From the NCBI RefSeq assembly GCF_030144855.1, contig NW_026779564.1, positions 682,001-746,000 of the forward strand: a stretch of DNA of 64,000 nucleotides. Reading direction: 5' to 3'. The stretch comes from Hypanus sabinus (taxonomy: Eukaryota). How positions within the stretch are numbered: position 1 is the first letter of the stretch; each line of letters begins with the position of its first letter. The position numbers were made by a program, and so were the translations under genes. Shown here in pieces: positions 1-59,594 of this stretch. Under the pieces are notes generated by a model. It searched no databases and had not been told where the DNA came from. It was given only the letters and a program-made list of their open reading frames with translations.

Positions 1-910
1 TTCTCAGCCGAGGAAACTGCGGTCTCTCCAAATGCATCACGCGTTACCTGGTGGCGATGGCTGCGGCGGATCTAATGGTGTAATTATCGAAGTCCTGTTC
101 TACCAGATGGATCAAGCAAACGGATTTCATTTCGGAATCCTGGACCACGCTCCGTTCTGGCTTGTCCACTACGTCATGTGTCACGTGACCGTTGACTGTT
201 CCGTGTGGTTTACTGCCGCTTTCACTTTCGATCGCTTTGTGGCCATTTGCTGCGCTAAATTTAAAACTAAATACTGCATCCCCAGAGTTGCAGGACTGGT
301 GATTGTTGCAATATCTGTCGGTTTCTGTTTAAAAAACATCCCATTTTATTTCCTCTATATGAATGGAGCAACTTTGTTGGTAAATGGTAACTGGGTCTGT
401 ACCAACAGGCCTGCACTTCCTTTCACGGGACCGTTTGAGGGGTTTTATTGGGTGGACCGTCTGTTGAATCCGCTACTTCCTTTCATCCTCATTTTGACCC
501 TCAATGCTCTGACCGTCAGACAGATACTGGCGGCGAGCAGAGTCCGCAGGGGACTGATGGGACGGGGAAATTCCGGGAAACAGCGAGATCCGGAGATGGA
601 GAGTCGAAGACAATCCATCATTCTGCTCTTCAGCCTGTCGGTGAGTTTCCTTCTCTGTTGGGCGACAACCACTCTGGTCTTTATTCTCATGCAATGCCTC
701 TGCATCGACCTGGAAACGTCCATTCGGCTTTATCAGGCACAGCTTGCGGGTTCTGTGATTCAGAACTTCAGCAGCTGCGCAAATACTTTTATCTACGATG
801 TGACACAGACCAGATTCAGAGAGCAGTTGGAAGTTATTTTGATCTCCCCCGCTAATTTTGCTTTGAAAAATTTTAGAAGTCTTTACCGCTCAGTCGAAAG
901 GGTCAATTAA
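1..910 (+). pseudogene. G1: GPR139/GPR142-like class A GPCR, exon 2 (5' end outside window), frameshifted
   Basis: Frame 3 reads LSRGNCGLSKCITRYLVAMAAADLMV then TAA at 81-83. The receptor continues in frame 2 (VIIEVLFY...SVWFTAAFTFDRFVAIC...NTFIYDVTQTRFREQL) to the stop at 910. Paralog G4 has ATG GTG GTG ATT here, so one G is missing near 80. TM3 Cys is TGG (APFW, 158-160) versus APFC in G4. AATAAA at 926-931. Confidence 0.85.
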
Positions 911-1169
911 TTTTGACATTCAGAAAATAAATTCACACCTGCTCTACAAGCGCTTAAATAAATTGAACTTCCTGGAAACGTTGTTGTTCCCAGCAGTTCA
1001 GCCTTTCCATTATTTCAGGAAATGAGGTATTGTTATTTATATATAGGTTGTGGAGATAATCAGGTAAGAAGTTGTGAAAGGGAGACATGAATGCCGAATG
1101 GTGAAGAAATTGTGGGAGTGAGTGTGAGCAATGACCAGTCGTTAGTGAAATCGATATAATATTATATAA

Positions 1170-2170
1170 TATTTGAGGCTACCCTGACGGAATACAAGGT
1201 GTCAGTACTCGAACCTGTGTGTCGCCGCCTTGGCAGTAGAGGAGGCCGCGGACTGACATGTCAGAATGGGAACGGGGAGTAGAATCGAAAGGGGAGGCCA
1301 TCGCTTTTCGTGGCAGGTGCTCGACGAGCGGGAGGGGCCTTCCGATCTACGTTGTGTCTCACTGATATATAGGAGCTCTCAACGACCGGATACAGTAGAT
1401 GACCCCAACAGACCCGCAGGTGAGGTGTCGCCACACCCGGAAGGACTGTTTGGGGTCTGAGGGAGGGGGTGTAAGGGCAGATGTTGTGCTTGTTCCAGTT
1501 ACCATGATAAGTGCCAAGAGGAAGATCAGTGGGGAGGGACAAGAGAGTCACACAGGGAGTCACCCTGCAGAAAGCAGAAATGGTCGGGAGTTGCATGAGG
1601 ACGGGAAGATGTGCTCGGTCGTGGGATCCCGTTGGAGGTGGTGGAAGTTATGTACAATTATGTGCAGAATGTGCATTGTGTTGTGGTAAGTGAGGACAAG
1701 AGGGACACTATCCGTGATGGGGCGGCGGGAGGATGGTGTAAGGGCAGATGTGTGTGAAATGGAAGAGATGCGGGTGAGGCAGCGTTCATGTTGGGGGAGA
1801 GGAAGCACCTTTCTTTGAAGAAGGAGGACATGTCAATTGCTCTGGAATGAAAAGCATCAGCCTGAGAGCAGATACAGAGGGGACGGAGGAGCTGAAAGAA
1901 GGGGTGGCATGAGGTACCGTCCGGACAGCTGTGAGTCTGTAGGTTTATTAAATATACCAGTGGATAGACTGTCTCCGGAGATGAAGGCAGAGATGGAGAA
2001 AGGGAAGAGAGGAGTCGGAAATGGACCAGGTAAGTTTGAGCGCAGGGTGGAAGTCGGAGGCAAACTTGAATAATTCCACGAGTTCTGCACGAGTGCGGGA
2101 AGCAGCAACTATGCAATCGTCGATGTCGTGTTGGATGATTTGGGGATCGTTGCTGCTGTAGGCTTGGAAC
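1170..2170 (-). mobile_element. Penelope-like retroelement fragment (RT C-terminus + GIY-YIG), degraded
   Basis: Minus-strand pieces SDFHPALKLTWSISDSSLPFL, ISGDSLSTGIFNKPTDS and HNICPYT match the PLE RT and GIY-YIG linker pattern; many frameshifts. Confidence 0.75.
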
Positions 2171-2176
2171 AAGTCC

Positions 2177-2620
2177 AGCTGACATCCAACTTGATGCTTT
2201 CCAAATGCTCCAGCACATCTTTTTCCATAATATTTACATGCTCAGGCTTTTCAGTCCGCTGTAGCTTATCCCTACAATCGTCAAGATCCTTTCTCCGTAG
2301 TGAATACTGAAACAATGTACTCATTAAGTACCTCCGCTATCTCCCCCGGTTCCATACACTCTTTTCCACTGTCACACTTGAATGGTTCTATTCCCTCATT
2401 TCTTTTACTCTTCACATACTTGTAGAAGGCCTTGGGGTTTTCCTTAATCCTGTCCATCAAGGCCTTCTCATGGCCCCTTCCGGCTCTCCTAATTTCGTTC
2501 TTGAGCTCCTTCCTGCTAACGTTATAATCTTCCAGCTCTCTCTCATTACCCAGTTTTTTAAACCTTTCGTAAGCTCTTCCTTTCTCTTGACTAGATTTAC
2601 CACAGCTTTTGTACATTTCT
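2177..2620 (-). mobile_element. CR1 LINE ORF2 fragment
   Basis: IKENPKAFYKYVKSKR...EIAEVLNEYIVSVFT is the typical CR1 ORF2 linker. Confidence 0.8.
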
Positions 2621-3129
2621 TCGGCTTCTCTGCTCCAGGACGAGTAATAACAGCTTTTCCGGTCTTACCTGCGTCTGAGGTTCCTTAGCGGTGGAAATAT
2701 CCCCAGGAATATTCTCGGCTGCATGACGGATACGTCCACATCCATCCTAAATTGACGGGACCTGAATTGGGACCCACAGCCCAGATGTGCCCAGCCCTGC
2801 TCCAACATATTCCTGTTTCTCCCTCTGGGCTTCGAAGTGTCCAATGACCCTCACTCCCCACTCTCTCAACGAAGCAGTCCAACGCATCACAAGCACATCG
2901 CTTCTCGGAGTGAGCAGTATCTACAGGATGCTCCTCCTCAAGAAAGAAACAGCGTCATCAAAGGTCCCGTCATTCAGGTCATTCCGTCCGTCACAGCTGC
3001 AGTCAGACAGGAGCCGTATGCGTGTCACGTGCTTTTGTCGTCATGCGGTAACCATGCATTCCATTACAGAATAACACAGTTATAAATTATTCTCTACAGT
3101 ATCTGCAGAAATAAATGACATATATCGTG

Positions 3130-3700
3130 CAGAACGAAATAGAAAAATCCGGAGAAAGATTTCATCAGCGGATCGATCTCCATTCACAAATCTGATTGCA
3201 GATGGGCTGAAGCTGCTCCTGAAACGCTGAGTGTGTGTGGTCGGGCCCCTGTGCCCTCTCGGCGAGCGAAGTGGGGTGGGGTGAGCTCTTTTCTGATGGA
3301 CGCAGCATTTTGAGGCATCCATCAGTTTTTTGACGGTATCTTGTGTGCGTGGGAGGCTAGCGCCTGTGATGCAGCCTACCGAGAAAACATCTTTCAGCAG
3401 ACTGTTCTGATCCTGTGCAGTGGCCCCTCCATGGCGGACGGTGATGCTTTCAGTTAGAATGCTCTCCACGGTACATCTGTCGAAATGTGCGAGAGTCCTG
3501 CGTGACAGACCGATTCCTCTCAAACTCTGAATAAACTACAGCCGCAGTCGTGTTCTCTTTGAGACTGTATCAATATATTGTGCCGGGAATGGATCCTCAA
3601 AGAGGTTAACACGAATGAAATTGAAACTGCTCACTCCTTCCACTTCCGGTCCGTCAACGAGAGGACTGTTGGATGTTCCGTCGACCTCCCCTTCCTGAGC
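3130..3700 (-). mobile_element. Rex1/Babar-like LINE 3' fragment
   Basis: RRTLAHFDRCTVESILTESITV...FRSSFSPSAIR is a typical Rex1 RT C-terminus. Confidence 0.7.
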
Positions 3701-5232: not shown

Positions 5233-5750
5233 GAGAGAAATGCATATAAATGCTGCTCCAACGGGAAACTCGCAGCGCCTGTGGGCTTTATTTCAATTAA
5301 TTTGTTAATTTAGTTGTGCACTTATTTTATTAACATAATTAAAATATTTATTTTTCTTATTTCATTTCAACATTTCAGAGATTGTTTTACCAAACCATAG
5401 AAATATGCGGATCAGATTCTGTTCGGTTGGCCCTATGTAGTTTAATAACGAATCGCATGCAGAATGATCTTGGGCCGAACAGTCTGTCTGCCATAAGACT
5501 CTATTACGCATACGTGTACTGCTCCATACAACCGTCATCATTCATCAGTGCACTGACTCTCAAAATTTTAACGTAAACCAACTGCAAGAGGCTCTTCTTC
5601 TAAAAATAGCTCAGGGAATACAGAGTCGATTTACAGAGTATTTCCTGAATTGGAGGAACAGCGGGAAAAAAAAAGAGGAAAATTCACCCGACCGGACTGA
5701 ATCAGAGACTCACAGGTACAGGAGTGAGACGACAGACGTAATACTCGAGC

Positions 5751-6148
5751 AGAGACTGACAGACACAAAATGAAACCCAAACTCTCACACTGTAACAAAG
5801 ACTGACAGATACAGAATGAAACCCACACTCTCACACTGTAACAGAGACTGACAGATACAGAATGAAGCCCACACTCTCACACTGCAACAGACTGACAGAT
5901 ACAGAATGAACCCACACTCTCACACTGTAGCAGAGACTGAGAGATACAGAATGAAACCCACACTCTCACACTGTAGCAGTGACTGACAGATACAGAATGA
6001 ACCCACACTCTCACACTGTAACGGATACTGACAGATGCAGAATGAAACCCACACTCTTACACTGTAGCAGAGACTGAGAGATACAGAATAAAATGCATTC
6101 TCTCGCACTAAACCAGAGACTGACAGATACAGCAACCCACACTCTCAA
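5751..6148 (+). repeat. 46-bp minisatellite (about 8 units)
   Basis: Unit gagactgacagatacagaatgaaacccacactctcacactgtaaca; actgacagat recurs at 5801 and 5847. Confidence 0.9.
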
Positions 6149-6644: not shown

Positions 6645-6823
6645 NNNNNNNNNNNNNNNNNNNNNNNNNNNNNNNNNNNNNNNNNNNNNNNNNNNNNNNN
6701 NNNNNNNNNNNNNNNNNNNNNNNNNNNNNNNNNNNNNNNNNNNNNNNNNNNNNNNNNNNNNNNNNNNNNNNNNNNNNNNNNNNNNNNNNNNNNNNNNNNN
6801 NNNNNNNNNNNNNNNNNNNNNNN
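6645..6823. other. Assembly gap (others at 26612-26775, 49020-49187, 49572-49759, 60316-60455, 62286-62542)
   Basis: Runs of N, most flanked by (TG/CA)n-like sequence. Confidence 0.99.
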
Positions 6824-6854
6824 GCCGTGTGTTTGCAAAAGAGAGCTGGAGGAA

Positions 6855-7339: not shown

Positions 7340-10110
7340 TTCGAGAACTGGACAAGGTGTCTCTCAACAAAGCTGGTATGTTTTATATCTGATGGCACAT
7401 AGTGGGACGGAGTGGGGAGAGTTTGGTGTCTGATGGGGAACTGGACAGGGTGTCTCTGTACACACCGTGTTTGTTTTATATCTGATGACACATAGTGGGA
7501 CGGGGTGGGGAGGGTTTGGTATCTGATGGGGAACTGGACAGGGTGTCTCTGTACACACCGGGTGTGGTTTACATCTGATGGCACATAGTGGGACGGAGTG
7601 GGGAGGGTTTGGTGTCTGATGGGGAACTGGACAGGGTGTCTCTGTACACACCGTGTTTGTTTTATATCTGATGACACATAGCGGGACGGGGTGGGGTGGG
7701 TTTGGTGTCTGATGGAGAACTGGACAGTGTGTCTCTGTACAGAGCGGGTATGTTTTATATCTGATGACACATAGTGGGACGGGGTGGGGAGGGTTTGGTG
7801 TCTGATGGGGAACTGGACAGGGTGTCTGTAGACAGCGGGGATATTTTATATCTGATGACACATAGTGGGACGGGGTGGGGTGGGTTTGGTGTCTGATGGA
7901 GAACTGGACAGGGTGTCTCTGTACACACCGGGGATGTTTTATATCTGATGACACATAGTGGGACGGGGTGAGGAGGGTTTGATGTCTGATGGGGAACTGG
8001 ACAGGGTGTCTCTGTACACAGCGGGTATGTTTTATATCAGATGACACATAGTGGGACGGGGTGAGGAGGGTTTGATGTCTGATGGGGAACTGGACAGGGT
8101 GTCTCTGTACACACCGGGTACGTTTTATATCTGATGACACATAGTGGGACGGGGTGGGGTGGGTTTGGTGTCTGATGGGGAACTGGACAGTGTGTCTCTG
8201 TACAGAGCGGGTATATTTTATATCTGATGACACATAGTGGGACGGGGTGGGGTGGGTTTGGTGTCTGATGGGGAACTGGACAGGGTGTCTCTGTACAGAA
8301 CGTGTATATTTTATATCTGATGACATAGTGGGACGGGGTGGGGAGGGTTTGGTGTCTGATGGGGAACTGGACAGGGTGTCTGTAGACAGCGGGGATATTT
8401 TATATCTGATGACACATAGTGGGACGGGGTGGGGTGGGTTTGGTGTCTGATGGAGAACTGGACAGGGTGTCTCTGTACACACCGGGGATGTTTTATATCT
8501 GATGACACATAGTGGGACGGGGTGAGGAGGGTTTGATGTCTGATGGGGAACTGGACAGGGTGTCTCTGTACACAGCGGGTATGTTTTATATCAGATGACA
8601 CATAGTGGGACGGGGTGAGGAGGGTTTGATGTCTGATGGGGAACTGGACAGGGTGTCTCTGTACACATCGGGTACGTTTTATATCTGATGACACATAGTG
8701 GGACGGGGTGGGGTGGGTTTGGTGTCTGATGGGGAACTGGACAGTGTGTCTCTGTACAGAGCGGGTATATTTTATATCTGATGACACATAGTGGGACGGG
8801 GTGGGGTGGGTTTGGTGTCTGATGGGGAACTGGACAGGGTGTCTCTGTACAGAACGTGTATATTTTATATCTGATGACATAGTGGGACGGGGTGGGGAGG
8901 GTTTGGTGTCTGATGGGGAACCGGACAGGGTGTCTGTAGACAGCGGGGATGTTTTATATCTGATGACACATAGTGGGACGGGGTGAGGAGGGTTTGATGT
9001 CTGATGGGGAACTGGACAGGGTGTCTCTGTACACAGCGGGTATGTTTTATATCAGATGACACATAGTGGGACGGGGTGGGGAGGGTTTGATGTCTGATGG
9101 GGAACTGGACAGGGTGTCTCTGTACACACCGGGTACGTTTTATATCTGATGACACATAGTGGGACGGGGTGGGGTGGGTTTGGTGTCTGATGGGGAACTG
9201 GACAGTGTGTCTCTGTACAGAGCGGGTATATTTTATATCTGATGACACATAGTGGGACGGGGTGGGGTGGGTTTGGTGTCTGATGGGGAACTGGACAGGG
9301 TGTCTCTGTACAGAACGTGTATATTTTATATCTGATGACATAGTGGGACGGGGTGGGGAGGGTTTGGTGTCTGATGGGGAACTGGACAGGGTGTCTGTAG
9401 ACAGCGGGGATATTTTATATCTGATGACACATAGTGGGACGGGGTGGGGTGGGTTTGGTGTCTGATGGAGAACTGGACAGGGTGTCTCTGTACACACCGG
9501 GGATGTTTTATATCTGATGACACATAGTGGGACGGGGTGAGGAGGGTTTGATGTCTGATGGGGAACTGGACAGGGTGTCTCTGTACACAGCGGGTATGTT
9601 TTATATCAGATGACACATAGTGGGACGAGGTGAGGAGGGTTTGATGTCTGATGGGGAACTGGACAGGGTGTCTCTGTACACACCGGGTACGTTTTATATC
9701 TGATGACACATAGTGGGACGGGGTGGGGTGGGTTTGGTGTCTGATGGGGAACTGGACAGTGTGTCTCTGTACAGAGCGGGTATATTTTATATCTGATGAC
9801 ACATAGTGGGACGGGGTGGGGTGGGTTTGGTGTCTGATGGGGAACTGGACAGGGTGTCTCTGTACAGAACGTGTATATTTTATATCTGATGACATAGTGG
9901 GACGGGGTGGGGAGGGTTTGGTGTCTGATGGGGAACTGGACAGGGTGTCTGTAGACAGCGGGGATGTTTTATATCTGATGGCACATAGTGGGACGGTGTG
10001 GGGTGGGTTTGGTGTCTGATGGGGAACTGGACAGGGTGTCTCTGTACACAGCGGGGATGTTTTATATCTGAAGGCACATAGTGGGTCGGGGTGGGGCGGG
10101 TTTTGTGTCT
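7340..10110 (+). repeat. 93-bp G-rich minisatellite array, about 30 units, with 554/461-bp higher-order repeats
   Basis: Unit ttttatatctgatgacacatagtgggacggggtggggtgggtttggtgtctgatggggaactggacagggtgtctctgtacacaccgggtatg, period 93 (7381, 7474, 7567). An 89-bp marker variant recurs at about 8310, 8864, 9325 and 9879. Confidence 0.95.
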
Positions 10111-10591
10111 GAGCGGACAAAGTGGAGCTGCTGTGTAATAAATCAAATGTAAGTCTGCAGGAGGAGAGTGGGAGGGGTTTTCATGTGTCCCTGCACCCAG
10201 AACACACTGAGGGGAATGCGGATCTATTTGTAGATAAACCAGCAGGCGTAACAGTGAAAAGTGCAGAAAATGCTGGAAACCTCGATTCCGGAATGCTTGT
10301 GGAATTAAAACCACAGTGAAAGTTTCAAGATTGAAAATGGGAACAGTCCTGACCTCTGTCACTATAAGTGTGGATTGTTGTGAGCAGAGTTCTCATTGTT
10401 CACTTATTGGTCTCATTACACATTTTGGTCAAATTACACAGAGGGATCTGACTGAGGTAATGCCAATGATACTGACGTGTTTGTGTTACATGCCTACAGT
10501 ATTTGCTCCTGAGACACTGCCGGTGATGTAATTTGTTTGTTCAATAACAATGGTGGGAGGTGGGACCTTGTCACTGGAGATCGATCCCCTG

Positions 10592-10597
10592 TATAAA
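10592..10597 (+). promoter_or_regulatory. TATA box of G2
   Basis: TATAAA starting 89 nt before the ATG; identical context in paralog G5. Confidence 0.65.
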
Positions 10598-10680
10598 TCA
10601 GAGCCTGTTGCAGTACGTCAGCCCAGAGTGTCTTGCCGAGCTGTGGAATTCAGAGCAATCGCGTTCACTGTGTCACTCAA

Positions 10681-33993: not shown

Positions 33994-35686
33994 TTATCTA
34001 CACAGATGGCCATTTAATGTAAACACATACTTCATTCCATTGATCAGATCTTCTCTGAATTTCCTCTGTGTCAGTGTGTAGATACAAGTATTGGTGCACA
34101 TGCTGAGAAATTGTAACATGAAACCAAGTTGTTGGAGGATGTATACCGGGGAACTCAAATATCTGTTCTGGTAAAGATAGTTTTGCACTTGCCATTTCAG
34201 AGAACGGGCTACATGGGGCATCCAAAATAATATGAAATTAGCTGATATAGAAAACAGCAAAATCATCGATTTTCTCCGTTTCTCCACCTCGGCATCTTTC
34301 TGATTGTCGCTGCTGTCCCGAAGCTTTCTGCGGACTCTATTTGCCACAACGATATGTCTTACAGTTAACCCATTAAAAATCAGGACTAAGCCGATTGGCA
34401 GCAATGGTGTTAAAATACTGATCAGTATTTGGTATCCTTTCCACAAGGGTGAAGTAACGTATTCATACGTGCTGATGCACCGCCACGGCGTGTTGTCAAC
34501 GATGACGTAAGGTTCAATGGCAAAGTATAACGGGGCACATTTCCCGCCGCTCACTATAAGCACGGTCACCATAACCACTGTTGCTGTTCTCTCGGTGCAG
34601 TATCGCTCCCGAAGCTTTCGGTAACATATTGCGATGCAGCGATCGAAGGTAAAACTGACCGTGAACCAGACAGAACAGTCCCTCGTTACTTGGACAAATA
34701 CAAGAGTCAGAGCGCATACAGGAGTGAGGAGCAGGGTTCTGGAATAAATGTAGATATTGTTGGTCTCTTCCAATAAAGCAGCAACGATAACCACCATCAG
34801 ATCCGCTGTTGCCATTCCAATCAGGTAACGGGTGATGCATTTGGAGAGTCCGCATTTTCCCCGAGAAAGGATCACAATCGCCGTTAAATTAACTGCAAGA
34901 AATTTGGAAACAAAATAGAAATATGGTCAGCTCACTGAATGCTCCCATTCTTGCGATGCTATGTCGGGTATGGTCTGTTTGGAAGTGGAAAGCGGGAATC
35001 CAGTGTGTGCGGTCTCGGTCGCTGCACTCCGGCTGGAGGACAATGACGGATGTGAGTGTCAGTGGATTGGCGACCTTCCCACAGTTTAGAGCGAGGCATC
35101 CGAGTCCCACGACTCACGTACCGGTGAGCAGTCGATCGCTCCTGTAAACGACACCATTTCCATTATTAGAAGTAAAATAGCTGACGGGATTGTTTGTAGC
35201 GGTGACAAAGTGGCATCAAGGAGATGCAAAGTACGCGTTCTCATTTAATGACTTACATAAGAACAGAACCACGTGTCGAAAATAGACGGGACCGTCATTT
35301 AAATAAGCTGCCAGGTTGTTATAAGATCGAAGTGTCTGCACTGATATAGACTCGGACCTAGAAAAGCAGAGATCAGCATCACTTCAGAAAGCTTAGCGAG
35401 GTGACATTCTGAAGCAATGTCAAAATCGGCACCAACTTAATTGACAAAAGCAAGAAACGAAGTATGGAAAATGAAAATAAAAGCACTGGATGCCTGGATC
35501 CTCCATTCCGGAAACACGTTTCAGCCGACGGTAGCATCTGTGCTCAGTAACAGTGCGGATACCGTAGCAGAGTAACGACGGCACCATACATAAAGTGAGC
35601 AGCTCCGGCATCTTACCGGGGACACCAACCGCTACAAGTGTGGGATAGAAAATGGCCGCGATGTAGTAAATAGCCGGATATCCCAT
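33994..35686 (-). CDS. G3: GPR139/GPR142-like class A GPCR, 322 aa, complement(join(33994..34892,35617..35686))
   Basis: Exon 1 MGYPAIYYIAAIFYPTLVAVGVP+G with GTAAG donor; TTGCAG acceptor; spliced GVPVNLTAIVILSRGKC. Open 7TM frame (TFDRCIAIC, FWMPH, CTNTCIY). AATAAA on the minus strand at 33951-33956. Confidence 0.92.
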
Positions 35687-39944: not shown

Positions 39945-42550
39945 TCGTGTACAGTCATCAGAGTTTAGTCTCATTCGGTATCTTGTTCAGAGCAGAAGTT
40001 GTGAGTCAATGGGCTTGTTCCCGTGCTGTACTGTTCCCAGGATCCCAACATGTCCATGTGACGTGTTCACCTTGTAATATTAATCTATTAATCATCAGCT
40101 GCCCATTCTCCTCCATTCATCTCGTTCTTCTGCACTGGTGAGTGTAATATAGATCACGGTGTCTTGCTACACAGGAACAAATTCTTCCGTCCACCATGTC
40201 CCTGACGAGCGGAACATTCCCGGCTAAGCTGTGACGTAACCAGTGACGCCAAATTCTCCGGATTTCATCAATTAACCGGATGCTGCAATTTGGAATTTTG
40301 GGAAATTCCAACTTTGAAAATTTACCTTCCCTCGCATTCCTATTCACAAACTCATTCGGTGCTGCACAGAACAACGTAGACACAATTTTATCAATGGGAA
40401 AGGCATGGCATTTGCAGACAATTCTGAGGTTATCTAAGAAAATCGAAATGAATATTATATTATTTATGAGTGGGACATAACTCGAATAGACTAATGGTCT
40501 GGTGCACATTGAGAAATATGTGACAGAATCGGCAAACATAACAGAGCAGATCACGGTGAAGGTAGCAATTTAGAATTGCTGAGAGGAAATGTATTCACAT
40601 AAATACTGCTGGAACATGCAACGCTCTGCCTCAGTTGGTCTTATGTGGAGCAAATTATTAATTTAATTACTCACTCATTTATATAAATTAATGAATTTAT
40701 TTAATTTGATCATTTTCATTCAACATTTACGAGGTTGTTTTGCGAAACCACAGAAAGTTGCAAATCACGTGCTGCTCAATTGGTTCTATGTGGTTGAGTA
40801 AAAAATAGCGTGCAGAATGATGTCGGGCCGAATGGTCTGTTTGCCATATGATTCTACGACGCTGAATGTCCTGCTGGATACAGCCGTCATCATTCATCGG
40901 TGCACTGTCCATCTCACAATCATAACAAAAACCGACTGCAGGAGACTCGTGCTCTAAAAATAGCTCATGGAATACAGAATCTATTTTAAGATTATTTACC
41001 AGGTTTGACGGACAGCTGGGAAAAAAAGGAGAAAAAATACACGTGCTCAGAATGCATCAGAGTCTCACAGGTACAGGACTGAGAAGACACACTTAACGGT
41101 GGATCCGAGGCAGATAAATGGAAAATGAAACCCACACTCTCACATAGTAACAGAGAATGACAGATACGGAATGAAACCCACACTCTCACACTGTAGCAGA
41201 GAGTGACCGATACACAATGAAACCCACACTCTCACACTGTAACAGAGAGTGACAGACACCGAATGAAACCCGCTCTCTCACACTGTAACTGAGACTGACA
41301 GATACAGAATGACACACACAGTCGCACACTCTACAGAGACTGGTATGTACAATATAAAATGCACACTCTCACACTGTGACAGAGACTGGTATGTAGACTA
41401 TGAAATGCACACTCTCACAATGAACCAGAGAGTGAGAACTAAAGAACCGGACACTCCCAGTCTGTACCAGGGACTGATATCTATAAAATGATCCCCACAC
41501 TGTCACATTGCACCGGAGACTGGTGAGTACTGGACGAACCACCCCTCCACACTCTACCGCAGACTGGTGGGTACAGGATGGACCACCCCTCCACACTCTA
41601 CCGCAGACTGGTGGGTACAGGATGGACCACCCCTCCACAATCTACCGGTGACGGGCAGGTGAAGAATGGAACCCACACTCTTATATTATCCGACTGAGTG
41701 TCTCCCGTTTGTCGATTGTCTCTGCACTGCTATCGTTCTCACTCACTAATTCTGCATTTTATGTCAACTGCATATTAACCCTCTCTTCATTTTCACCTTG
41801 TGATCAACTGCATGCTCAATCCTATCCTCTCTCTGGTCGATTGGCCTATTACTCTGTTCTCCCAATTTATTGTTGTTCTTCTTTTATTCTGCTGTAAATA
41901 ATCTTTGCTTCTGCAACATGGCCTTGCAGCTGTTTCAATTCCGCTTTTGCTTCTTCAACCCTTAATCGAAATGCCGACTCCACCGTGAAACATCGTGTTC
42001 AGCGCGTTCCGATTGGGAAGAGAAAGGCATGAACTGGGAGATCGACAAAGAATTTAATATATGTACTGACGTTCATGTGTGTTTGTGTATGTGTGTGGAT
42101 GTTGAGTCCATGTGTTTGTGTTCACGACTGTGTGTGTGTGTATTCGTCTGAGCGAGTGTGTGCCAATATTGGATTTTAATATTGCTTTATGTGATGGGGT
42201 GGCCCTACTTTTCGGTCCTGCATTTATTTCTGCAGGGCACTGCGAAGGTAATGCCAAGGACACGGGCATTTTTATGTTCAACCATGAGAAGAATCGGAAT
42301 GAAATCTACAGACGGCAGAAAGTATTTTATTTTATAACGGTATTCACACCAGGGAGAAACCTGTTGATGGTTGTGCTCGTAACCCCCAGGACAGTGAGTG
42401 ACAGCCTTATCAGCCCATTGTATTCCTACAGCTAAGTGAAACAGTATTTCAGTATTTAACTGTTCCTCAGGTGGATTCCACACCGGCTTTGTCCGTCACT
42501 TTACAGTTTCAAACTCCACAGCACGAGTAGGAAATTTTATACATACTCGT
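39945..42550 (+). repeat. Cassette copy B (46-bp minisatellite at about 41120-41440; 44-bp GC variant x3 at about 41520-41650)
   Basis: Collinear with copy A without the Rex1 insert. Confidence 0.85.
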
Positions 42551-44702: not shown

Positions 44703-45013
44703 TTACTCTTGTGGCGATCATCATACTCAGCCGAGGAAACTGCGGTCTCTCCAAATGCGTCACGCGTTACCTGGTGGCGATGGCTGCGGCGGATCTAATG
44801 GTGGTGATTATCGAAGTCCTGTTCTACCAGATTGGTCGAGCATCCAGATTAGGTTACGGAGTCCGGGACAACGCTCCGTTCTGCCTTGTCCACTACGACC
44901 TGTGTCACGTGGCCGTTGACTGTTCCGTGTGGTTTACTGTCGCTTTCAGTTCCGATTGTTTTGCGGCCATTTGCTCCGCTAAATTTAAAACGAAATACTG
45001 CATCCCCAAAATT
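44703..45013 (+). pseudogene. G4: truncated GPR139-like GPCR exon 2 (TM1 to ICL2), G1 subfamily
   Basis: T-rich tract plus CTGCAG acceptor (ends 44702). Reads VTLVAIIILSRGNCGLSKCVTRYLVAMAAADL...FSSDCFAAICSAKFKTKYCIPKI (DRF changed to DCF), then switches abruptly to LINE RT. Exon 1 and the 3' half were not found. Confidence 0.88.
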
Positions 45014-46700
45014 GTGGGTACCCACAGCTCTAATCTGCTAATTAAATTTCCGAGGACACTGTATTGATTGGCCCTAGACAATAACGAGATAGCCTACAGT
45101 GAAGAAGTCATCTCTCTGACACAGTGGTGTCAAGAAAACAACCTCTCCCTCAATGTTGCTAAAACGAAGGATCTGATTGTGGACTACAGGAGGAATGGAG
45201 ACGGGATAACCCCTGTTGATATAATTGGATTTGGGGTTGAGAGGGTGAACAGCTTCATGTTCCTCGACATAAACATCACGTTGTTTGTGAACTCCAGGTG
45301 TGTTGTGAAAAAGGCACAACGGCACTTATTTTCGCTCAGACGGTTGAGGAAATTTGGCATGAGCCCCTAAACCCTAAGGGCTTTCTAAAGGGTCACAATT
45401 GAGAGCATCCTGATTGGCTGCATCACTACCTGGTATGGGAACTTTACCTCCTTTACTCGCAGGATTCTGCAGAGTGTGGTGCGGACAGCTCAGCACATCT
45501 GTAGTTGTGAACTTTCTATTGTTACGTACTCGTGATACATGACAGTGGAGCCCTTGTCATGTGACTGGGGTTGAAGCTGTACTGGACTTGAGGTGATGGT
45601 CTTGTGATGGTGGAATGACGTCATTTTCCCGCCAGTAGAGATCATGTGACGGGTTTTTTTTACAGGTTATAAAAGGTAGACCCCACCCTGTGAGGAGGGG
45701 CAGTTCGTGGCTGGATTTGCCAGGTTGACTTCATGCCACTGCGTGTTTGAAGTGATGACGCAGTTTAGTTGAAGGATGAAGTTTTTATTTAATGTCTAAA
45801 GTTTAAAAGGTCATTGCCAGCAGGTTCTTTATGAGTCTGTTATTTCGCAATTAGAGGAGAGTGAAGATTCAAGGTTGGAAGTTAAAGATCGAGGAGAATC
45901 GCTTTCTACGGTGAAACGGGGGCGACCTTTGTTTGATCCTTATTTGGAAGGATTTCGTTGACTATCTTCGTGTTAATCCCTGGGTTTACCAGAAAGGATT
46001 GAGGATAGTGTGGAAGGAAAGGTCAGTGCCTTTAAGCCGATCTGTTTCGTAAATTCTTCGTGGGAAGTTCGACGTCGGGGATCGAAGTAAGCGACGTGAA
46101 AGAGAATTTAAATCGTCCTGTAAAGTCTCTCCTTTTAAATGGACTGTGAGCATATCGAACTTTTGGCAATACCACTTTAAAGAACTGTTTTGGAATATCA
46201 CTTTACGAACTGTTTGAACAGCCGCTCAGCAGCTGTTTCCGGTTACGGTAGTGTTTGTTTACTTTTGGGGGGTTTGTTTTCTGTGTTTACTAAACGTGTT
46301 GTTTGTTATAAGAAACCCTTGCCGATCTCATATATTTATTGTTGCCTGAATACGTAACACTATGATTCAGGACATCTACAAAGACAGGTGTAAAAAAGCG
46401 ACCAAAGTATCACTGGGGACCAGAGGCACCCCAACCACAAACTGTTCCAGCTGCTCCCATCCAGGAAATAGTACTGCAGCATAAAAGGCCGGACCAACAG
46501 GCCCCGGGACATCTTCTTCCACCAGACCATCAGACTGATTAACTCACGGTGATTTGAGTGTATTTCTATGTTACATTGACTGTTCTACTTATTATAACTT
46601 ACTATGATTTCACGTTGCACATTTAGACAGAGACGTGACGTAAGTATTTTCCTCTTCATGTGTGTGAAGGACGTAGGAAATAAAGTCAATTCAATTAAAT
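45013..46700 (+). mobile_element. 5'-truncated Rex1-like LINE (interrupted by an LTR)
   Basis: THSSNLLIKF, YSEEVISLTQWCQENNLSLNVAKTKDLIVDYRR, KKAQRHLFSLRRLRKFG. Resumes after the LTR and ends aataaagtcaattcaatt. Confidence 0.85.
45520..46359 (+). mobile_element. Complete solo LTR, 840 bp, 4-bp TSD CTAT
   Basis: TGTTACGTA...TACGTAACA inverted termini. CTAT at 45516-45519 and 46360-46363. Internal TGACGTCA and TATAAAAG. Confidence 0.92.
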
Positions 46701-49199: not shown

Positions 49200-51375
49200 C
49201 GTGTGTATGTATGTGTTTCTATGTGTGTATATGCATATATTGATGCGTAAAAGTAACTCTTATATATTTCGTAATTTACATGCAAAAATATTTACTACTT
49301 GCGCTGAGGACAAAGCCGCAATTGAACCCACCTGAGGAATAGATAGATACTGAAATACTGTGGTGCTCAGTTAGCTGTAGGAATATAATGGGCTGATAAG
49401 GCTGCCATTTACTGCCCTGTGGGTTACGAGCACTACCATCAACACGTTTCTCTCTGGTGTGAATATTAGAGACGATTATCAGAACAGACACACATACACC
49501 CACATACACACGCACACACACGCACACACACTCACACACACACACATCATAAAACTCACACACAAACATTGNNNNNNNNNNNNNNNNNNNNNNNNNNNNN
49601 NNNNNNNNNNNNNNNNNNNNNNNNNNNNNNNNNNNNNNNNNNNNNNNNNNNNNNNNNNNNNNNNNNNNNNNNNNNNNNNNNNNNNNNNNNNNNNNNNNNN
49701 NNNNNNNNNNNNNNNNNNNNNNNNNNNNNNNNNNNNNNNNNNNNNNNNNNNNNNNNNNNTCAGATCGTGTATTAGGGTAACTGCCGATCTCCAGGTCCAT
49801 CCCTTTCTTTTCCCTCACTGAGCGTGTCAAACGCGGTATTTTAGGTTTGAGTAAGCATATCGATTAAGGGATGGAAGAAAAGGAAGGGACCTTGAAACAG
49901 ACGTAGAGCCATGTTGCAGAAACAAGAAATATTCAGAGCAGAATGAAAGGGAAGTTAGTGAGAGAGAACGACAGCAGTGCAGAGGCAATCAGCCAACGGG
50001 AGATATTCAGTCGGATAATTTGAGAGACGGTGTTTCATTCATTTCGCGGGTCTAATGTGAAGAGAGGTTGTTCATTCTGTACCCACCAGCCTCCGGTGCA
50101 ATGTGTGAGTGTGGGGTTCATTTTGTACAAACCAGTCCCTGGTACAGCCTGTGACATTGGGTTCCTGTAGCTGTCACTCTCTGATTCAGTTAGAGTGTAT
50201 GCATTTCATTCTGTACATACCAGCCGTGACAGCGTGGGTTTGATTCTGAGTCTCTGTTACAGTGTGAGAGTGTGGTTTTAATTCTGTATCAGTCAGTCTC
50301 TGTTACATTGTGAGAGTGTGGGTTTCATTCTGTATCTGTCACTCTCTGTTACAGTGTGAGAGTGGTGATTTTGTTCTGTATCTGTCAGTCTCTTTTACAA
50401 TGTGGGAGTGTGGGTTTCATTCTGTATCTTTCAGTCTCTGCTACAGTTTGAGAGTGTGGGTTTCATTCTGTATCTGTCAATCTCTGCTACAGTGTGAGAG
50501 TGTGGATTTCATTCAGTATCTGTCAGTCTCAGTTACGGTGTGAGAGTGTGGGTTTCATTCTGTATCTGTCAGTCTCTGCTATAGTGAGAGTGTGGGTTCC
50601 TGCTGTATCTGTCAGTCCCTGTTCCAGCTTTAAGTGTGTCGTCTCAATTCTGAACATATGACTCTCTGAGTTAGTGTGACTGGGCGCATGTTTACACCTT
50701 CTTACGCGCTGTTCCTCAAATTCATTGAATGCTCTTAAAATAGATTCTGGTTCCCTGAGCTACTTTTAGAATAAGATTCTCCGAGTTCTGGTTCATGTTA
50801 AAATTGTGAGATACAGAGTTTACTGATGAACGATGACGATGGTATTCAACAGTCCATTCACTGTAATCGAGTCACATGGCAAGAGACCCTTCGGCCCGGC
50901 ATCAATCTGCACGCTATCCATTACTCTGCCGCCTAGAGCCAATCGAACATCATCTGATCGATAACTTTCCGTGGCTCGGCAACACAACTTCTTAAATGTT
51001 GAATGAAAATAAGCAAATTAAATAAATGTTTTAATTTAAATTAGTAGTCGCATAAGTAAATTAATAAATTGATTGAAATAAACCCAGTGGGGCAGTGGAT
51101 TTCATATTCCGGTATCATTTATATGAATACATTTCTCTGAGAAATTCTAAGTTCTTTCCTTCACCGTGCATCTTTGCACCCTTGTGTTTGACGATTCTGT
51201 CAGGATCTTCCCAATGTGCAGCAGAGTATGAGTTTATTGGAAAGTGATATGCCACTCATAAATAACGTAATATTGATTTCGATTTTCCAATCACGCTTTC
51301 AGCCTGTTCTGTGACTTGCAAATCATTTTTTCATGGATAAAATTGTGACTGAGCTCAGTTTTCACATTTGGAATC
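49200..51375 (-). repeat. Cassette copy C (46-bp minisatellite at about 50250-50625), inverted
   Basis: Reverse complement is collinear with copies A and B. Confidence 0.85.
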
Positions 51376-56160: not shown

Positions 56161-57421
56161 TTAAATTGGATCTCTCTGATGAAGTGTGCCGGCCCGGAAC
56201 ATTGACTGCTTACTCTTTTGCACAGATTCTGCTCGGCTTGCTGAGCTCCTTAGGATTGTGTGGGTATTACTTTGATTTCCAGCTGCAGATGTTCTCCAGT
56301 TTGCGATTAGACTTGGACAACAGTCAACAGTATAAGAACCTGCGCTGCAGACACGAAACAAAATTAACCCTGGGTCAGCGCCAACTCCGGAATGCGATGC
56401 TCTTGTCATTTAATCTTGCCAGACAATTATGTCGTAGTCTTTAAGCTACTCAATCTGATTGGGAGTTAAATTGGACAAGACTAGAACTTGGAGTTCACGC
56501 TGAATGACGTCGCTTGGGATTCACGCTGCTTTTGTGCTCACGGTGGCCGGTGAGAGGACACAATCCTTACGTATCACTGGAAACATTTTTTTTATGATAA
56601 AACGCTGAGTTGGTAATAACTGACGCGAGGTGCATAAATCAATTGTGCGCTTGAAAAGATATCTGTCGTGTCGAATCTTACTTCCGTCAACTCCGGGTGA
56701 GGAGAATCACCGGTGTTGTGTAACGCTGATCGGTGCCAGGACAGACATCAGTGAGACGGAACTGGAAATGCAACAGTGTGAGTAATGTTCCGTCAGAAAG
56801 AGGTACAAAGTCTTTTAAAGTAATTTTAATTCGGATTTTCAGTAACATTCATTTATTTTTCATATATCGATAAAACTTACAGGTAGAGCCTAGTTAGTTA
56901 GAGAGAGAAAAAATAAACAAATAACTTATTTTCCCGTGGCTCTGGAAGTTGATTAAATTTCAGCGTACATTGATGATCAATATAAATATATGTTCCTGCA
57001 ATGAGACTTTGTACTTTGCTCAGTACACGACCGGACAGAATATGTGATCAGAGAGAAACAGAGAACAGAGGGAAGCAGAGGGAAAGAATCAGACTGACGG
57101 GGCCTCGGGATGTGAACAGAGATAAAGCCGGAGAGATGCGGGGACAACGAGGGAGCAGGTCGGAGATGGAGATTGAGTTGAAAAAGAAGGAAAACAACGC
57201 ACACGCTCTGTTCCAGCCCGATCATATCTCCCTCACGGTGAAACTCACTCGTCTGCAATGAGATTAAATTTTGTTCCGAACGGGACCGGACGTGCGGACA
57301 GAGAGAAACAGGGAACAGAGATTCACGGGACCTCAGGATGTGAACGGAGATAAAGGGGCAGATATGAAAGGACAAAGCGGAGCAGTCCGGAGATGGAAAA
57401 GGAGTTGGAAAAGTAAAGAAA

Positions 57422-57463
<42 letters not shown>

Positions 57464-57900
57464 CTCCGCTGTGTTTCAGTCTGATCACGCTCCCCTCACC
57501 GGCGTGGGGGAAGGAGTAAAACACCGTGAGCGGCACTGAGAAGGGTGAAACAGAAACAACGGAGAGAATAGAGAAAAGGGAGAGGATTCTTCCTAACTGG
57601 ACCAGCCCAGAGTAAAACGCTGTCAGATGTGATGGAGATTATTACAGTAAAACGGACGGGACCTGACTATAGACCCTCCATCGGGGCGAATTACAGCTGA
57701 GGTGACCGCTACATATTACATATTCGTTGAAGGACACATTTCACCTGTACAGGGAAAACAGCGAGTGGAATATATCATCACAAAAACGCATGCGTATTTC
57801 AGTGCGCTCAGTTGTTACCAATGGTTCTACATATCGGCAAGTGGATAGATTTTGGAGGAAACATGGTGTTTGACTGAAATCTCCGGCAGAAACCGCTGCT

Positions 57901-59594
57901 CTATGATTTAGGGAATTTGGTTAACAGTTTCAGCGGGTATTTCACCGCGTTCTTCAGCTCCTCTCTGAACTTGCTCTGAGTCACGGCGTAAATACATGTG
58001 TTGGTGCAGGAGCTGAGGATCTGCAGCATCGTAGCCGTGGATTCTGCGATATAAATCGGATCAGTGTCCGTGTAACGAGGGATGTTTGCAATCAGTACGT
58101 AGAGTTCAAAAACCACTAGTGTTAACCACAGAAATATAAAACTACCGGTTATACTGAATAGTAAAACGACCGATTTCCTTCGGTTCTCCAACTCCGGGTC
58201 CTTGTCATTCTTCCCGTTACTGCGGCCCCGGAGCCCCTTCCGGACTTTATTAGCGGACAAAATCCGCCTGACTGTCAGAACATTGAACAATAAAATCAGA
58301 ACAAACGGGAGACAAGGCATGAAAACGCGATGAATCATCTGAAATGCGGCCCACGAGGGAGACGTATAGAAACTCTCTATGCTGACACAGCCATAGAAAA
58401 CTCCATCAATTATCTCCGAATGTTCCAATGTAAAGTAGAAAGAGACACTTTCCAAACAGCCCAGAACACTCACTGTCCCGATAACCACAGCCCCCGTTCT
58501 TTCGGTGCAATATTTCGTTTTCAGCTTTTCACAACAAATGGCCACAAATCTGTCACATGTGAACGCGACTGTCAGCCAGACAGAGACCCCGGTGCTTCCT
58601 ATGAGCAGGCAACGAACAACCCTACAAACGGGAGTCCAATAGAGGAAGGAAGACCGAAAGTATATGAGAACAATCCACTTCAGCAGAGGGTCAGAGATAA
58701 CGACCAGGAGATCGGCCGCTGCCATTCCCAGCAGATAGCGAGTGATGCATTTGGAGAGACCGCACTTTCCTCGGGACAGGATAACAATCGCCACCAGGTT
58801 CACTGCAAGAGGGAGGGAAAGTAGCAGAGAAATTACTCACCTGTCAGGGCAATAGAGCAAAGTTGTTATTATTAGACTTCACCTTGTTTTTTTTTCTGCT
58901 TCAAATGATGGAAACTGGACCAGAACATATGAACACGTTGACGGTGTGCAATATCGGCGTGACAGAGAACTCTCCGCGTGTTTTGTAAATGGGTTCAATC
59001 TGGGTGAACTCCCAAACCGACCAGATGACAGCTAGTTAAACGCTTCCTGACCGCAGTAAGGAATGGGTATGATATACCAACGTCACTGGTCTGAGCATCA
59101 CAGGAATGAAATGAAATCCACATCAGCGGTTCCCTCTGCTGATATTTCTAACATAAATGAGCCATTCGCGTTGTTCCATCACCCAGTCAGGCAATTCACA
59201 GTCGATTTATACGGACAAAACAGAAGGTCGGCTGGCTCCCACGGATGCAGTGTAGCCCGGTTTCCTCATGTGCTGACATTTCAATTCACAATTATTACAT
59301 GGCATCGAGGCAGTGGAGTGGATTTCAGTCAAAGGCAGCATCTCGGCTGCAATATGGAGCGCTGCCTGCTACGAAAGCAATGGGATTAATATTGTTAGCG
59401 ACTTCCGCCCATGACTGAAATGCGGGACTGGGCAGGTGGCTGTGGAAACAAGTAGCGAGAGAAACACTTCAGAACATCAGAATAAACTCTCAGTTTCTGC
59501 CTTTGGAGGTGTGCCCCGGCTTACCGGGGATCCCAACGGCTGAAATAACTGGGTAGTAAATGTCTTCTATCCGCCAGATTACTGGATATCCCAT
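57901..59594 (-). CDS. G5: GPR139/GPR142-like class A GPCR, 323 aa, complement(join(57901..58802,59525..59594)); close paralog of G2
   Basis: Exon 1 MGYPVIWRIEDIYYPVISAVGIP+G with GTAAGC donor; TTGCAG acceptor; open 7TM frame. Intron and flanks align to G2. Confidence 0.92.

What the first reader, a model, noticed from the sequence alone, without database searches (positions are those of the whole stretch)
1..59594. Cluster of GPR139/GPR142-like receptors evolving like a chemoreceptor repertoire
Seen: five related GPCR loci in 60 kb (3 intact, 2 disabled), falling into at least three divergent subfamilies (G1/G4, G2/G5, G3). The three intact genes are about 323 aa with only about 10 residues before TM1 and no N-terminal glycosylation sequon. 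Established: mammalian GPR139 and GPR142 are single-copy, conserved receptors activated by L-Trp/L-Phe, and chondrichthyans have very few canonical OR genes. Inference: a lineage-specific tandem expansion with birth-and-death turnover could be an unrecognised chemosensory (or immune-sensing) receptor family built from an amino-acid-sensor scaffold, rather than true GPR139 orthologs.
Basis: partly seen in the sequence, partly recalled or inferred. Interest (0 to 1): 0.85.

Follow-up and report, generated by a model that had tools for sequence, protein, structure and literature searches.

The report
Shark/ray-expanded GPR139-like receptor gene cluster
This stretch holds three working and two broken copies of an orphan cell-surface receptor that sharks and rays have multiplied into dozens or more copies per genome, with varied ligand pockets as in smell receptors, but where the genes are expressed is unknown.

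Summary
The window has five related rhodopsin-type GPCR loci. Three are intact two-exon genes of 322-323 aa: G2, G3 and G5. G1 has a 1-nt frameshift and is cut by the window edge. G4 is a 109-codon stump followed by retroelement-like sequence. No assembly gap lies inside any of the five.

They belong to a very large elasmobranch family that NCBI auto-names 'probable GPR139': 1,867 protein clusters in at least 19 species. They are not GPR139 orthologs. Identity to GPR139 is about 21-22%, and GPR139's ligand-contact residues are not kept.

A tree puts the elasmobranch genes as one clade. Its sister is a gene seen once per listed species in amphibians and sturgeon, which shares the same phase-1 intron in TM1. 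GPR139 is still the nearest solved receptor (112 vs 86 bits).

Signalling residues are almost invariant, while the outer, ligand-facing half is hypervariable. G2/G5 dN/dS is 1.0 in the outer half and 0.27 in the inner half.

So 'birth-and-death, ligand-diversified repertoire' is supported. 'Chemosensory' remains an inference, because no RNA data could be found. No paper in the searchable library describes this expansion. The scan's first-stage notes mention GPR139 in 36 findings of this genome, including similar clusters on other pieces.

The parts
1..910 (+). G1: exon 2 of a G1/G4-type receptor, cut by the window's left edge. It has a 1-nt deletion near 79-81 (TAA at 81-83 in the original frame) and Cys3.25 replaced by Trp. 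Probable pseudogene.
10681..10750 (+). G2 exon 1 (MGYPVIWRIEDIYYPVISVVGIP plus 1 nt; donor G|GTAAGC)
11450..12351 (+). G2 exon 2, after the acceptor ...CTCTCTTGCAG. The spliced product is 323 aa and intact.
33994..34892 (-). G3 exon 2. The spliced product is 322 aa and intact.
35617..35686 (-). G3 exon 1 (MGYPAIYYIAAIFYPTLVAVGVP plus 1 nt; donor G|GTAAGA)
44703..45028 (+). G4: a 109-codon stump of exon 2, 89.6% identical in DNA to G1. N1.50 is T and DRF is SDC. Homology ends at 45014. Pseudogene.
45068..45367 (+). Retroelement-like ORF tail directly after the G4 stump. It gives a weak sub-threshold PF09004 hit. By recall, that domain sits at the end of fish LINE reverse transcriptases.
57901..58802 (-). 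G5 exon 2. The spliced product is 323 aa and intact, 84% identical to G2.
59525..59594 (-). G5 exon 1 (MGYPVIWRIEDIYYPVISAVGIP plus 1 nt)
10016..12517 (.). Duplicated unit shared, inverted, with 57738-60210 at 82% identity. It carries about 0.66 kb of upstream DNA, exon 1, the intron, exon 2 and about 0.17 kb downstream. Exons are 90-96% identical and the intron 82%.

Best explanation
The window is one tandem cluster of a very large receptor family expanded across elasmobranchs.

Shown:
- Each intact gene (G2, G3, G5) encodes a complete class A GPCR. The signalling residues are kept: N1.50, D2.50, the Cys3.25-ECL2 disulfide, DRF, W6.48, N7.49 and Y7.53. There is also a strongly conserved ICL3 motif, LRGxSxGxNxKDPEMENRRKS.
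- The family descends from an old jawed-vertebrate gene of the GPR139 group. That gene is seen once per listed species in amphibians and sturgeon.
- In sharks and rays it multiplied by local DNA duplication, with the intron retained. The duplicated unit here is at least 2.5 kb and includes the upstream region.
- Copies are lost to frameshifts and to truncation; retroelement-like sequence follows the G4 stump.
- Selection keeps the inner, G-protein-facing half constant. The outer half varies freely or diversifies, including the positions that bind ligand in GPR139.

Inferred:
- Each paralog recognises a different extracellular ligand and signals through a common intracellular partner.
- The family therefore works as a sensory receptor repertoire. 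A chemosensory role (olfactory, gustatory or solitary chemosensory cells) is the most likely.
- Candidate ligands are aromatic amino acids, small peptides or related small molecules.
For: Gene models and intactness.

Family size and taxon range:
- 1,867 clusters at 90% identity with E<=1e-3. The top 120 are all elasmobranch, with at least 36-39 distinct clusters each in Heptranchias and Heterodontus.
- 760 clusters at E<=1e-10 with a basal query.
- 109 clusters at 50% identity with E<=1e-30, followed by a sharp drop.

Tree:
- The elasmobranch clade has support 92/91.
- It is sister (98/88*) to the amphibian plus sturgeon clade. That clade is one protein per listed species and 66-74% identical across 20 amphibians.
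- G1, G3 and G2/G5 fall in three subfamilies that each contain other shark or ray species.

A shared phase-1 intron lies directly after G-[IMV]-P. It is present in the window genes, Heptranchias, Xenopus, Odontesthes and Engraulis.

The nearest solved receptor is GPR139. A single sequence gives E 1e-13 against 6e-10 for the next hit. The family profile gives 112 bits against 86. Shared oddities include SIPYY at the TM4 end, LRGxSTGK in ICL3, and no Pro at 7.50.

Selection:
- Column entropy is 1.53 bits in the outer half and 0.69 in the inner half (p=2e-16).
- G2/G5 dN/dS is 1.02 outer and 0.27 inner, with an even dS of 0.16.
- Exons are more conserved than the intron.
- Microswitch residues are 74-78 of 78 conserved, while pocket sites 3.32, 3.33, 5.43, 6.51 and the equivalent of N271 are hypervariable.

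Background: catshark has only 2 OR, 6 OR-like, 3 ORA, 3 TAAR and 2 TARL genes (PMC11979771). My own knowledge: nearly all class A expansions of this size in vertebrates (OR, TAAR, V1R, T2R, MRGPR) are sensory.
Against: - There is no expression evidence of any kind. No RNA run holding these genes could be listed. The runs that were laid look like low-coverage DNA and show no exon 1-exon 2 joint.
- The catshark sensory-organ study found no GPCR among the 50 most specific genes of its 'brain & olfactory epithelium' library.
- dN/dS of about 1 in the outer half of a single pair cannot separate relaxed from positive selection.
- The family has no N-terminal glycosylation site, which I recall as usual in ORs and TAARs.
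- Another window of this genome is said to interleave such genes with T-cell-receptor V segments (scan note s1-181414, untested). That would fit an immune role as well.
Confidence: 0.5

Rival explanations
1. The family is an internal receptor repertoire rather than a detector of outside chemicals. Its members would be immune-cell or mucosal receptors for pathogen- or host-derived peptides and metabolites, or receptors co-evolving with an expanded endogenous peptide family.
For: - The GPR139/142 group is sister to protostome receptors for peptides with aromatic C-termini, and GPR139 itself responds to peptides (PMC8557429).
- Birth-and-death turnover with a hypervariable outer face is also typical of immune receptors.
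- Scan note s1-181414 reports family members interleaved with TCR V segments elsewhere in this genome (untested).
Against: - No V segment is present in this window.
- No expanded ligand family is known.
- My own knowledge: vertebrate class A families with dozens to hundreds of copies are nearly all sensory.
- No expression data exist either way.
Confidence: 0.25
2. The copies are mostly functionless by-products of segmental duplication in a repeat-rich region. Open reading frames persist only because elasmobranch DNA evolves slowly.
For: - Two of the five loci are dead.
- The region is full of interspersed and tandem repeats.
- Overall G2/G5 dN/dS is fairly high at 0.60.
Against: - Inner-half dN/dS is 0.27 at dS 0.16.
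- Exons are 90-96% identical against 82% for the intron.
- Microswitch residues are nearly invariant across 78 sequences from many species.
- Subfamilies are conserved between sharks and rays.
- Splice sites are intact in all three full genes.
Confidence: 0.1
3. The genes are true GPR139 or GPR142 orthologs or co-orthologs that all still sense L-Trp and L-Phe, as the automatic name 'probable GPR139' implies.
For: - GPR139 is the best hit among solved structures.
- Both have two exons (PMC7318219).
- They share motifs.
Against: - Identity to GPR139 is only about 21-22% in the structural alignment, against 70% between the human and zebrafish orthologs (PMC7318219).
- Of the GPR139 residues needed for activation (F3.33, H5.43, W6.48, N7.38, plus R6.51; PMC5430874), only W6.48 is kept family-wide. 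G2 has I, M, W, T and R at these sites, and G5 has L at 6.51.
- The sister clade is a separate amphibian and sturgeon gene.
Confidence: 0.05

Closest known systems
Human GPR139 (solved structures 7VUG-7VUJ, 9M42) and its paralog GPR142
   Same: Class A fold. GPR139 is the best-scoring solved receptor for one sequence and for the family profile. Both have two exons. Shared oddities: SIPYY at the TM4 end, PC in TM5, LRGxSTGK in ICL3, and no Pro at 7.50 (NTCIY versus NFFLY).
   Different: Identity is about 21-22%. GPR139 has a 43-residue N-terminal part before N1.50, against 24 residues here. The family has an extra conserved ICL3 block (KDPEMENRRKS). Most of the family has Thr at 6.50. The ligand-contact residues are not conserved. 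The family has dozens or more copies per genome, not one. GPR142 itself could not be compared: it was not among the listed PDB or Swiss-Prot fold hits.
Amphibian and sturgeon 'probable GPR139' gene (e.g. Xenopus tropicalis P0289, Pleurodeles P0217, Acipenser P0305)
   Same: It is the sister clade in the tree (98/88*). It has the same short N-terminus and the same phase-1 intron after G-M-P with a G|GTAAGC donor. It also shares the DPE(M/V)xRRxxS ICL3 block and the SxxxN(M/T)CIY TM7.
   Different: One protein per listed species, 66-74% identical across frogs, salamanders and caecilians, and only 31-35% identical to the elasmobranch genes. The Xenopus intron is 15 kb against 0.7 kb here. The Pleurodeles sequence has S at 1.50 and N at 2.50.
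'GPR210A/B' orphans of coelacanth, gar and some teleosts, placed beside GPR139/GPR142 in PMC6504862
   Same: Non-mammalian relatives of GPR139. Coelacanth P0231 and teleost P0245 are the next clade out in the tree. The teleost gene has the same intron position and phase.
   Different: 29-34% identical to G2 and low copy number. Whether P0231 is one of the named GPR210 genes was not checked.
TAARs, ORs, V1R/ORA, T2R and MRGPR: lineage-expanded class A sensory repertoires
   Same: Tandem clusters, many pseudogenes, species-specific recent duplicates on top of old subfamilies, a conserved intracellular face and a hypervariable pocket. TAARs are a precedent for an internal-ligand receptor lineage recruited to olfaction.
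   Different: No sequence membership in any of them: Pfam gives only the generic 7tm_1, and the nearest relatives are GPR139 and neurotensin-type receptors. Sensory expression is not shown. The family has a conserved intron inside TM1, whereas I recall most OR and TAAR coding regions as intronless.

Membership tests
Rhodopsin-like (class A) GPCR | Match to Pfam 7tm_1 above the gathering score | tested here: met
   46.8-78.6 bits against a cut-off of 30.5 for G1, G2, G3 and G5.
Rhodopsin-like (class A) GPCR | Seven helices plus helix 8, and the conserved microswitch residues | tested here: met
   The AF2 model of G2 exon 2 has pLDDT 85.7 and shows TM2-7, helix 8 and an ECL2 hairpin. Exon 1 supplies the rest of TM1. 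N1.50, D2.50, C3.25, D3.49, R3.50, W6.48, N7.49 and Y7.53 are present in G2, G3 and G5.
GPR139/GPR142 orthology | High identity to GPR139 (human and zebrafish orthologs are 70% identical, PMC7318219) | tested here: not met
   55 bits with one sequence. Identity to GPR139 is 21-22% in the structural alignment.
GPR139/GPR142 orthology | Conserved agonist-contact residues F3.33, H5.43, W6.48, R6.51 and N7.38 (PMC5430874) | tested here: not met
   Only W6.48 is conserved. 3.33 is I, I, Q, H in G2, G5, G3, G1. 6.51 is R, L, H, T. The N271 equivalent is T, T, F, S. All these sites are hypervariable family-wide.
GPR139/GPR142 orthology | Single-copy, conserved gene | tested here: not met
   Five loci in this window and at least 36-39 distinct clusters per species in two sharks.
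GPR139 group in the wide sense (deuterostome GPR139/142 and relatives) | GPR139 is the nearest characterised receptor by sequence | tested here: met
   Profile against PDB: GPR139 at 2.9e-31 and 112 bits, next NTSR1 at 1.6e-23 and 86 bits. The same top hit appears for the amphibian, coelacanth and Engraulis relatives. The fold search is not discriminating.
GPR139 group in the wide sense (deuterostome GPR139/142 and relatives) | Groups with canonical GPR139/GPR142 in a tree that also holds other peptide-receptor families | not tested
   No canonical GPR139 or GPR142 sequence could be obtained. Indirect support only: amphioxus 'GPR139' sequences fall next to the family, and amphioxus GPR139-type receptors group with human GPR139/142 in PMC8557429.
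GPR139 group in the wide sense (deuterostome GPR139/142 and relatives) | Two-exon gene with the intron in TM1 | tested here: inconclusive
   The phase-1 intron after G-[IMV]-P is shared by the window genes, Heptranchias, Xenopus, Odontesthes and Engraulis. GPR139 has two exons, but its intron position was not checked here. The amphioxus gene is intronless.
Vertebrate chemosensory receptor repertoire (functional class) | Large, tandemly clustered family with pseudogenes and lineage-specific duplicates | tested here: met
   Two of five loci here are dead. First-stage notes mention GPR139 in 36 findings of this genome (unchecked notes).
Vertebrate chemosensory receptor repertoire (functional class) | Variation concentrated in the ligand pocket, with a constant signalling face | tested here: met
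   Entropy is 1.53 against 0.69 bits (p=2e-16). G2/G5 dN/dS is 1.02 against 0.27. Site table.
Vertebrate chemosensory receptor repertoire (functional class) | Expression in chemosensory cells, one or few receptors per cell | not testable with these tools
   No RNA run holding the genes was listed. The laid runs look like DNA.
Vertebrate chemosensory receptor repertoire (functional class) | Different paralogs respond to different external chemicals | not testable with these tools
   This needs heterologous expression and ligand screening.

The most novel reading that the evidence does not exclude
This GPR139-related family is the largest rhodopsin-type receptor family of sharks and rays and serves as a previously unrecognised odorant or tastant receptor repertoire. 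It would have arisen from an aromatic amino-acid or peptide sensor, and would explain how elasmobranchs smell so well with almost no OR, TAAR or ORA genes.
Probability: 0.3. Interest if true: 0.9.

Novelty: new variant of a known kind. Interest (0 to 1): 0.68.

Why it matters
Cartilaginous fishes are described as poor in GPCRs and in odorant receptors: the catshark has 2 OR, 3 ORA and 3 TAAR genes (PMC11979771), and the whale shark paper notes a 'relative paucity' of GPCRs (PMC8455134). Their olfaction is attributed almost entirely to V2Rs.

A class A family with dozens or more genes per genome, conserved signalling parts and a diversifying pocket would be a strong candidate for the missing repertoire. 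It would be comparable in importance to the recognition of TAARs as olfactory receptors. Even if the role is immune or endocrine, this may be one of the largest receptor expansions in the group, and it is currently hidden under the misleading automatic name 'probable GPR139'.

The amphibian and sturgeon ortholog also gives a tractable entry point in Xenopus or axolotl for finding the ancestral ligand and tissue.

Tried and rejected
1. Single-exon reading. The stop-to-stop frames have no in-frame ATG and run through a polypyrimidine-CAG acceptor. This was replaced by two-exon models.

2. Expression. Two run searches listed no RNA holder. Four 'RNA?' runs that were laid gave short contigs that also cover the intron and showed no 10750-to-11450 joint, so they are probably low-coverage DNA of related species.

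3. Logan protein P0074. I hoped it was a spliced transcript, but it reads through the intron.

4. Fold search against Swiss-Prot models. All class A receptors score about 1e-9. GPR139 ranks 6th and 11th, so the search does not discriminate.

5. Canonical GPR139 and GPR142 for the tree.

6. Chimaeras. None was named among 240 listed hits. This does not exclude them.

7. Tandem neighbours in other species. The catshark locus gave no DNA, and the Heptranchias locus has one gene in 25 kb.

8. Catshark paper supplements. They are not held as text.

9. Literature. Eight searches with GPR139 or related terms plus shark, cartilaginous, elasmobranch, expansion or amphioxus, or 'GPR139-like', found no description of this expansion.

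10. The weak Pfam Srx (nematode chemoreceptor) hit of G3 is below threshold and was disregarded.

11. A scan for immunoglobulin/TCR V-like segments in this window found none.

Full report
**What is in the window.** A tblastn of the window's own long ORFs against the window finds five related loci and no more. Pfam calls the four long ones rhodopsin-type 7TM receptors.

None of the stop-to-stop frames has an in-frame ATG at the right place. Each runs into a polypyrimidine tract ending in CAG just before the codon for N1.50. Full-length homologs begin MGYPxIxxIxxIYYPxxxxxGxP. A scan for that pattern followed by a GT donor found one exon 1 for each intact gene.

- G2: exon 1 at 10681-10750, exon 2 at 11450-12351, plus strand.
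- G3: exon 1 at 35686-35617, exon 2 at 34892-33994, minus strand.
- G5: exon 1 at 59594-59525, exon 2 at 58802-57901, minus strand.

The spliced products are 323, 322 and 323 aa. N1.50 is residue 25, so the N-terminus before TM1 is under 10 residues and carries no glycosylation sequon.

**The two disabled copies.**
- G1 (2-910) starts inside exon 2 at the window's edge. Relative to G4 it lacks one base near 79-81, which gives a TAA at 81-83. It also has Trp where 72 of 78 family members have Cys3.25. The rest of G1 is open, so the loss is recent or the deletion is an assembly error.
- G4 (44703-45028) is 89.6% identical in DNA to G1 over 289 nt. It has lost N1.50 and the DRF motif, and its homology ends at 45014. 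An ORF typical of a retroelement tail follows (weak PF09004 hit), then a repeat that has another copy at 17137-17966.

**Assembly gaps.** All the gaps lie between genes. No reading frame depends on them.

**Duplication.** G2 and G5 sit in an inverted duplicated block of at least 2.5 kb (10016-12517 against 60210-57738, 82% identity). The block includes 0.66 kb of upstream DNA and the intron. Exons are 90-96% identical, the intron 82% and the upstream DNA 84.5%. Copies therefore arise by DNA duplication, not retroposition.

**How big and how old the family is.**
- A search with G2 found 1,867 protein clusters (90% identity) at E<=1e-3. The best 120 are all from sharks, rays and skates, and nearly all carry NCBI's automatic name 'probable G-protein coupled receptor 139'. 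Two sharks alone contribute 36 and 39 distinct clusters in that list.
- A basal family member as query gave 760 clusters at E<=1e-10, again all elasmobranch among those listed.
- Against 1.84 billion representatives the family is sharply bounded. There are 109 clusters at 50% identity with E<=1e-30. Below those come a few vertebrate relatives at 32-35% identity, and then unrelated-looking sequences at 24-28%.
- The few relatives are a salamander gene, a coelacanth gene and a teleost gene.
- The salamander gene belongs to a group with one protein per listed species, 66-74% identical across 20 frogs, salamanders and caecilians. A sturgeon relative is 46% identical. Its next-best hits are the elasmobranch genes at 32-33%.

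**Tree.** A maximum-likelihood tree of 53 sequences (LG+C20) gives these results.
- The elasmobranch genes form one clade (support 92/91).
- That clade is sister (98/88*) to the amphibian plus sturgeon clade.
- The pair is sister to a clade of coelacanth and teleost genes plus amphioxus 'GPR139'.
- G2/G5 are each other's closest relatives and nest among ray and skate sequences, so the genome is probably a batoid (an inference; support 86/83).
- G3 groups with Mobula and Rhinoraja genes, in a subfamily that also holds carpet-shark genes.
- G1 pairs with a catshark gene (100/100).
- The three subfamilies in this window therefore predate the shark/ray split, while G2/G5 is a later duplication (dS 0.16).

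**Relation to GPR139.** Among all solved structures human GPR139 is the best match. A single sequence gives E 1e-13, against 6e-10 for CCKBR. A 63-sequence family profile gives 112 bits, against 86 for NTSR1. The same holds for the amphibian, coelacanth and Engraulis relatives.

The alignment shows shared peculiarities: SIPYY at the end of TM4, PC in TM5, LRGxSTGK in ICL3, and no proline at 7.50.

The phase-1 intron directly after G-[IMV]-P is identical in position in the window genes, a cow shark, Xenopus (even the G|GTAAGC donor), Odontesthes and Engraulis. The amphioxus gene is intronless. GPR139 is reported to have two exons (PMC7318219). I could not check where its intron lies.

Against orthology:
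- Identity to GPR139 is about 21-22%, whereas true orthologs are 70% identical from human to zebrafish.
- Of the residues needed for GPR139 activation (F3.33, H5.43, W6.48, N7.38, with R6.51; PMC5430874), only W6.48 is conserved.

So these are members of the wider GPR139 group but not GPR139 or GPR142. A published survey already noted extra non-mammalian orphans ('GPR210A/B') beside GPR139/142 in coelacanth, gar and some fishes (PMC6504862). It had no sharks.

I could not put canonical GPR139 or GPR142 in the tree, so group membership rests on the evidence above. It also rests on the published grouping of amphioxus GPR139-type receptors with human GPR139/142 (PMC8557429). A Foldseek search of an AF2 model (pLDDT 85.7) against Swiss-Prot models does not discriminate among class A receptors.

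**How the family evolves.** Across 60 family sequences, mean column entropy is 1.53 bits in the extracellular loops and outer helix halves. It is 0.69 bits in the inner halves and intracellular parts (Mann-Whitney p=2e-16). The helix limits I used agree with the AF2 model.

Between G2 and G5, 38 of 52 amino-acid differences lie in the outer half. dN/dS is 1.02 there and 0.27 in the inner half, with the same dS of 0.16 in both. N1.50, D2.50, D3.49, R3.50, W6.48, N7.49 and Y7.53 are conserved in 74-78 of 78 sequences. Pocket positions 3.29, 3.32, 3.33, 3.37, 5.39, 5.43, 6.51, 6.55, 6.58 and the equivalents of GPR139 D268 and N271 each carry eight or more different residues.

This is the pattern of a signalling-competent receptor family that diversifies its ligand pocket. 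One pair cannot tell positive from relaxed selection.

**Function.** This is the weak point. No RNA run holding these genes could be listed. The runs I laid look like low-coverage DNA from related species, with contigs piling up on the conserved first 60-120 nt of exon 2 and no splice joint.

The catshark sensory-organ paper reports very small OR, ORA, TAAR and TARL repertoires. It does not mention this family, and it found no GPCR among the 50 most specific genes of its 'brain & olfactory epithelium' library. The whale shark paper stresses a paucity of GPCRs in cartilaginous fishes.

From general knowledge, class A families of this size in vertebrates are almost always sensory (OR, TAAR, V1R, T2R, MRGPR). 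That is why I rank a chemosensory or other sensory repertoire first, at about 0.5. An internal immune or peptide-receptor repertoire comes second at about 0.25.

**Novelty.** Eight literature searches found no description of this expansion. The library lacks most subscription journals, so prior description cannot be excluded. The genes are also visible in NCBI annotation under a misleading name. The scan's first-stage notes mention GPR139 in 36 findings of this same genome, including similar clusters on other pieces. This window is therefore one sample of a genome-wide family, not a unique locus.

**Verdict.** 'Birth-and-death, ligand-diversified, not GPR139 orthologs' is supported. 'Chemosensory' is plausible but untested.

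Noticed in passing
window 7345-10112: A G-rich 93-bp minisatellite (30 copies, 92% matches, higher-order period 461) ends about 570 nt upstream of G2's ATG. The duplicated G5 block ends at 60210, and an assembly gap follows at 60316-60455. Whether G5 has the array cannot be told.
   Followed up: partly
window 5750-6132, 41124-41435, 50249-50627, 63232-63651: An interspersed element carries an internal array of a 46-bp unit. It occurs at least four times in the window, in both orientations, as part of larger repeats 1-1.2 kb long and 72-75% identical.
   Followed up: no
window 45543-46359 and 17137-17966: Two copies of an interspersed repeat of about 0.83 kb, 81% identical. One lies just downstream of the truncated G4.
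   Followed up: no
window 11454-11575 (start of G2 exon 2): In low-coverage runs of four related organisms, many contigs pile up on the segment encoding NLVAIVILSRGKCGLSKC (summed depth up to 695, against under 25 elsewhere). This TM1-ICL1 stretch is conserved at DNA level across paralogs and species and would make a family-wide probe or primer site.
   Followed up: partly
P0125, P0002, P0098, P0109, P0121, P0090 (NCBI models of other elasmobranchs): Several annotated 'probable GPR139' proteins of 400-490 aa contain two receptor copies or receptor pieces. One carries a reverse-transcriptase domain. These look like gene models that fuse tandem neighbours or adjacent retroelements, so protein counts from annotation are unreliable in both directions.
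   Followed up: partly
L002 10001-26291 (Xenopus tropicalis): The amphibian ortholog has the same exon 1 length class and donor (G|GTAAGC), but a 15.2-kb intron against 0.7 kb here and 2.1 kb in Heptranchias (L006).
   Followed up: yes
P0191 subfamily: The most basal elasmobranch branch looks low-copy and roughly one-to-one across sharks and rays (51-86% identity in 11 listed proteins). This contrasts with the heavily duplicated crown subfamilies. It may keep the ancestral function.
   Followed up: no
another piece of the same genome (scan note s1-181414): A first-stage note says GPR139-like genes are interleaved with T-cell-receptor V segments elsewhere in this genome. No V-like segment is in this window.
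   Followed up: partly
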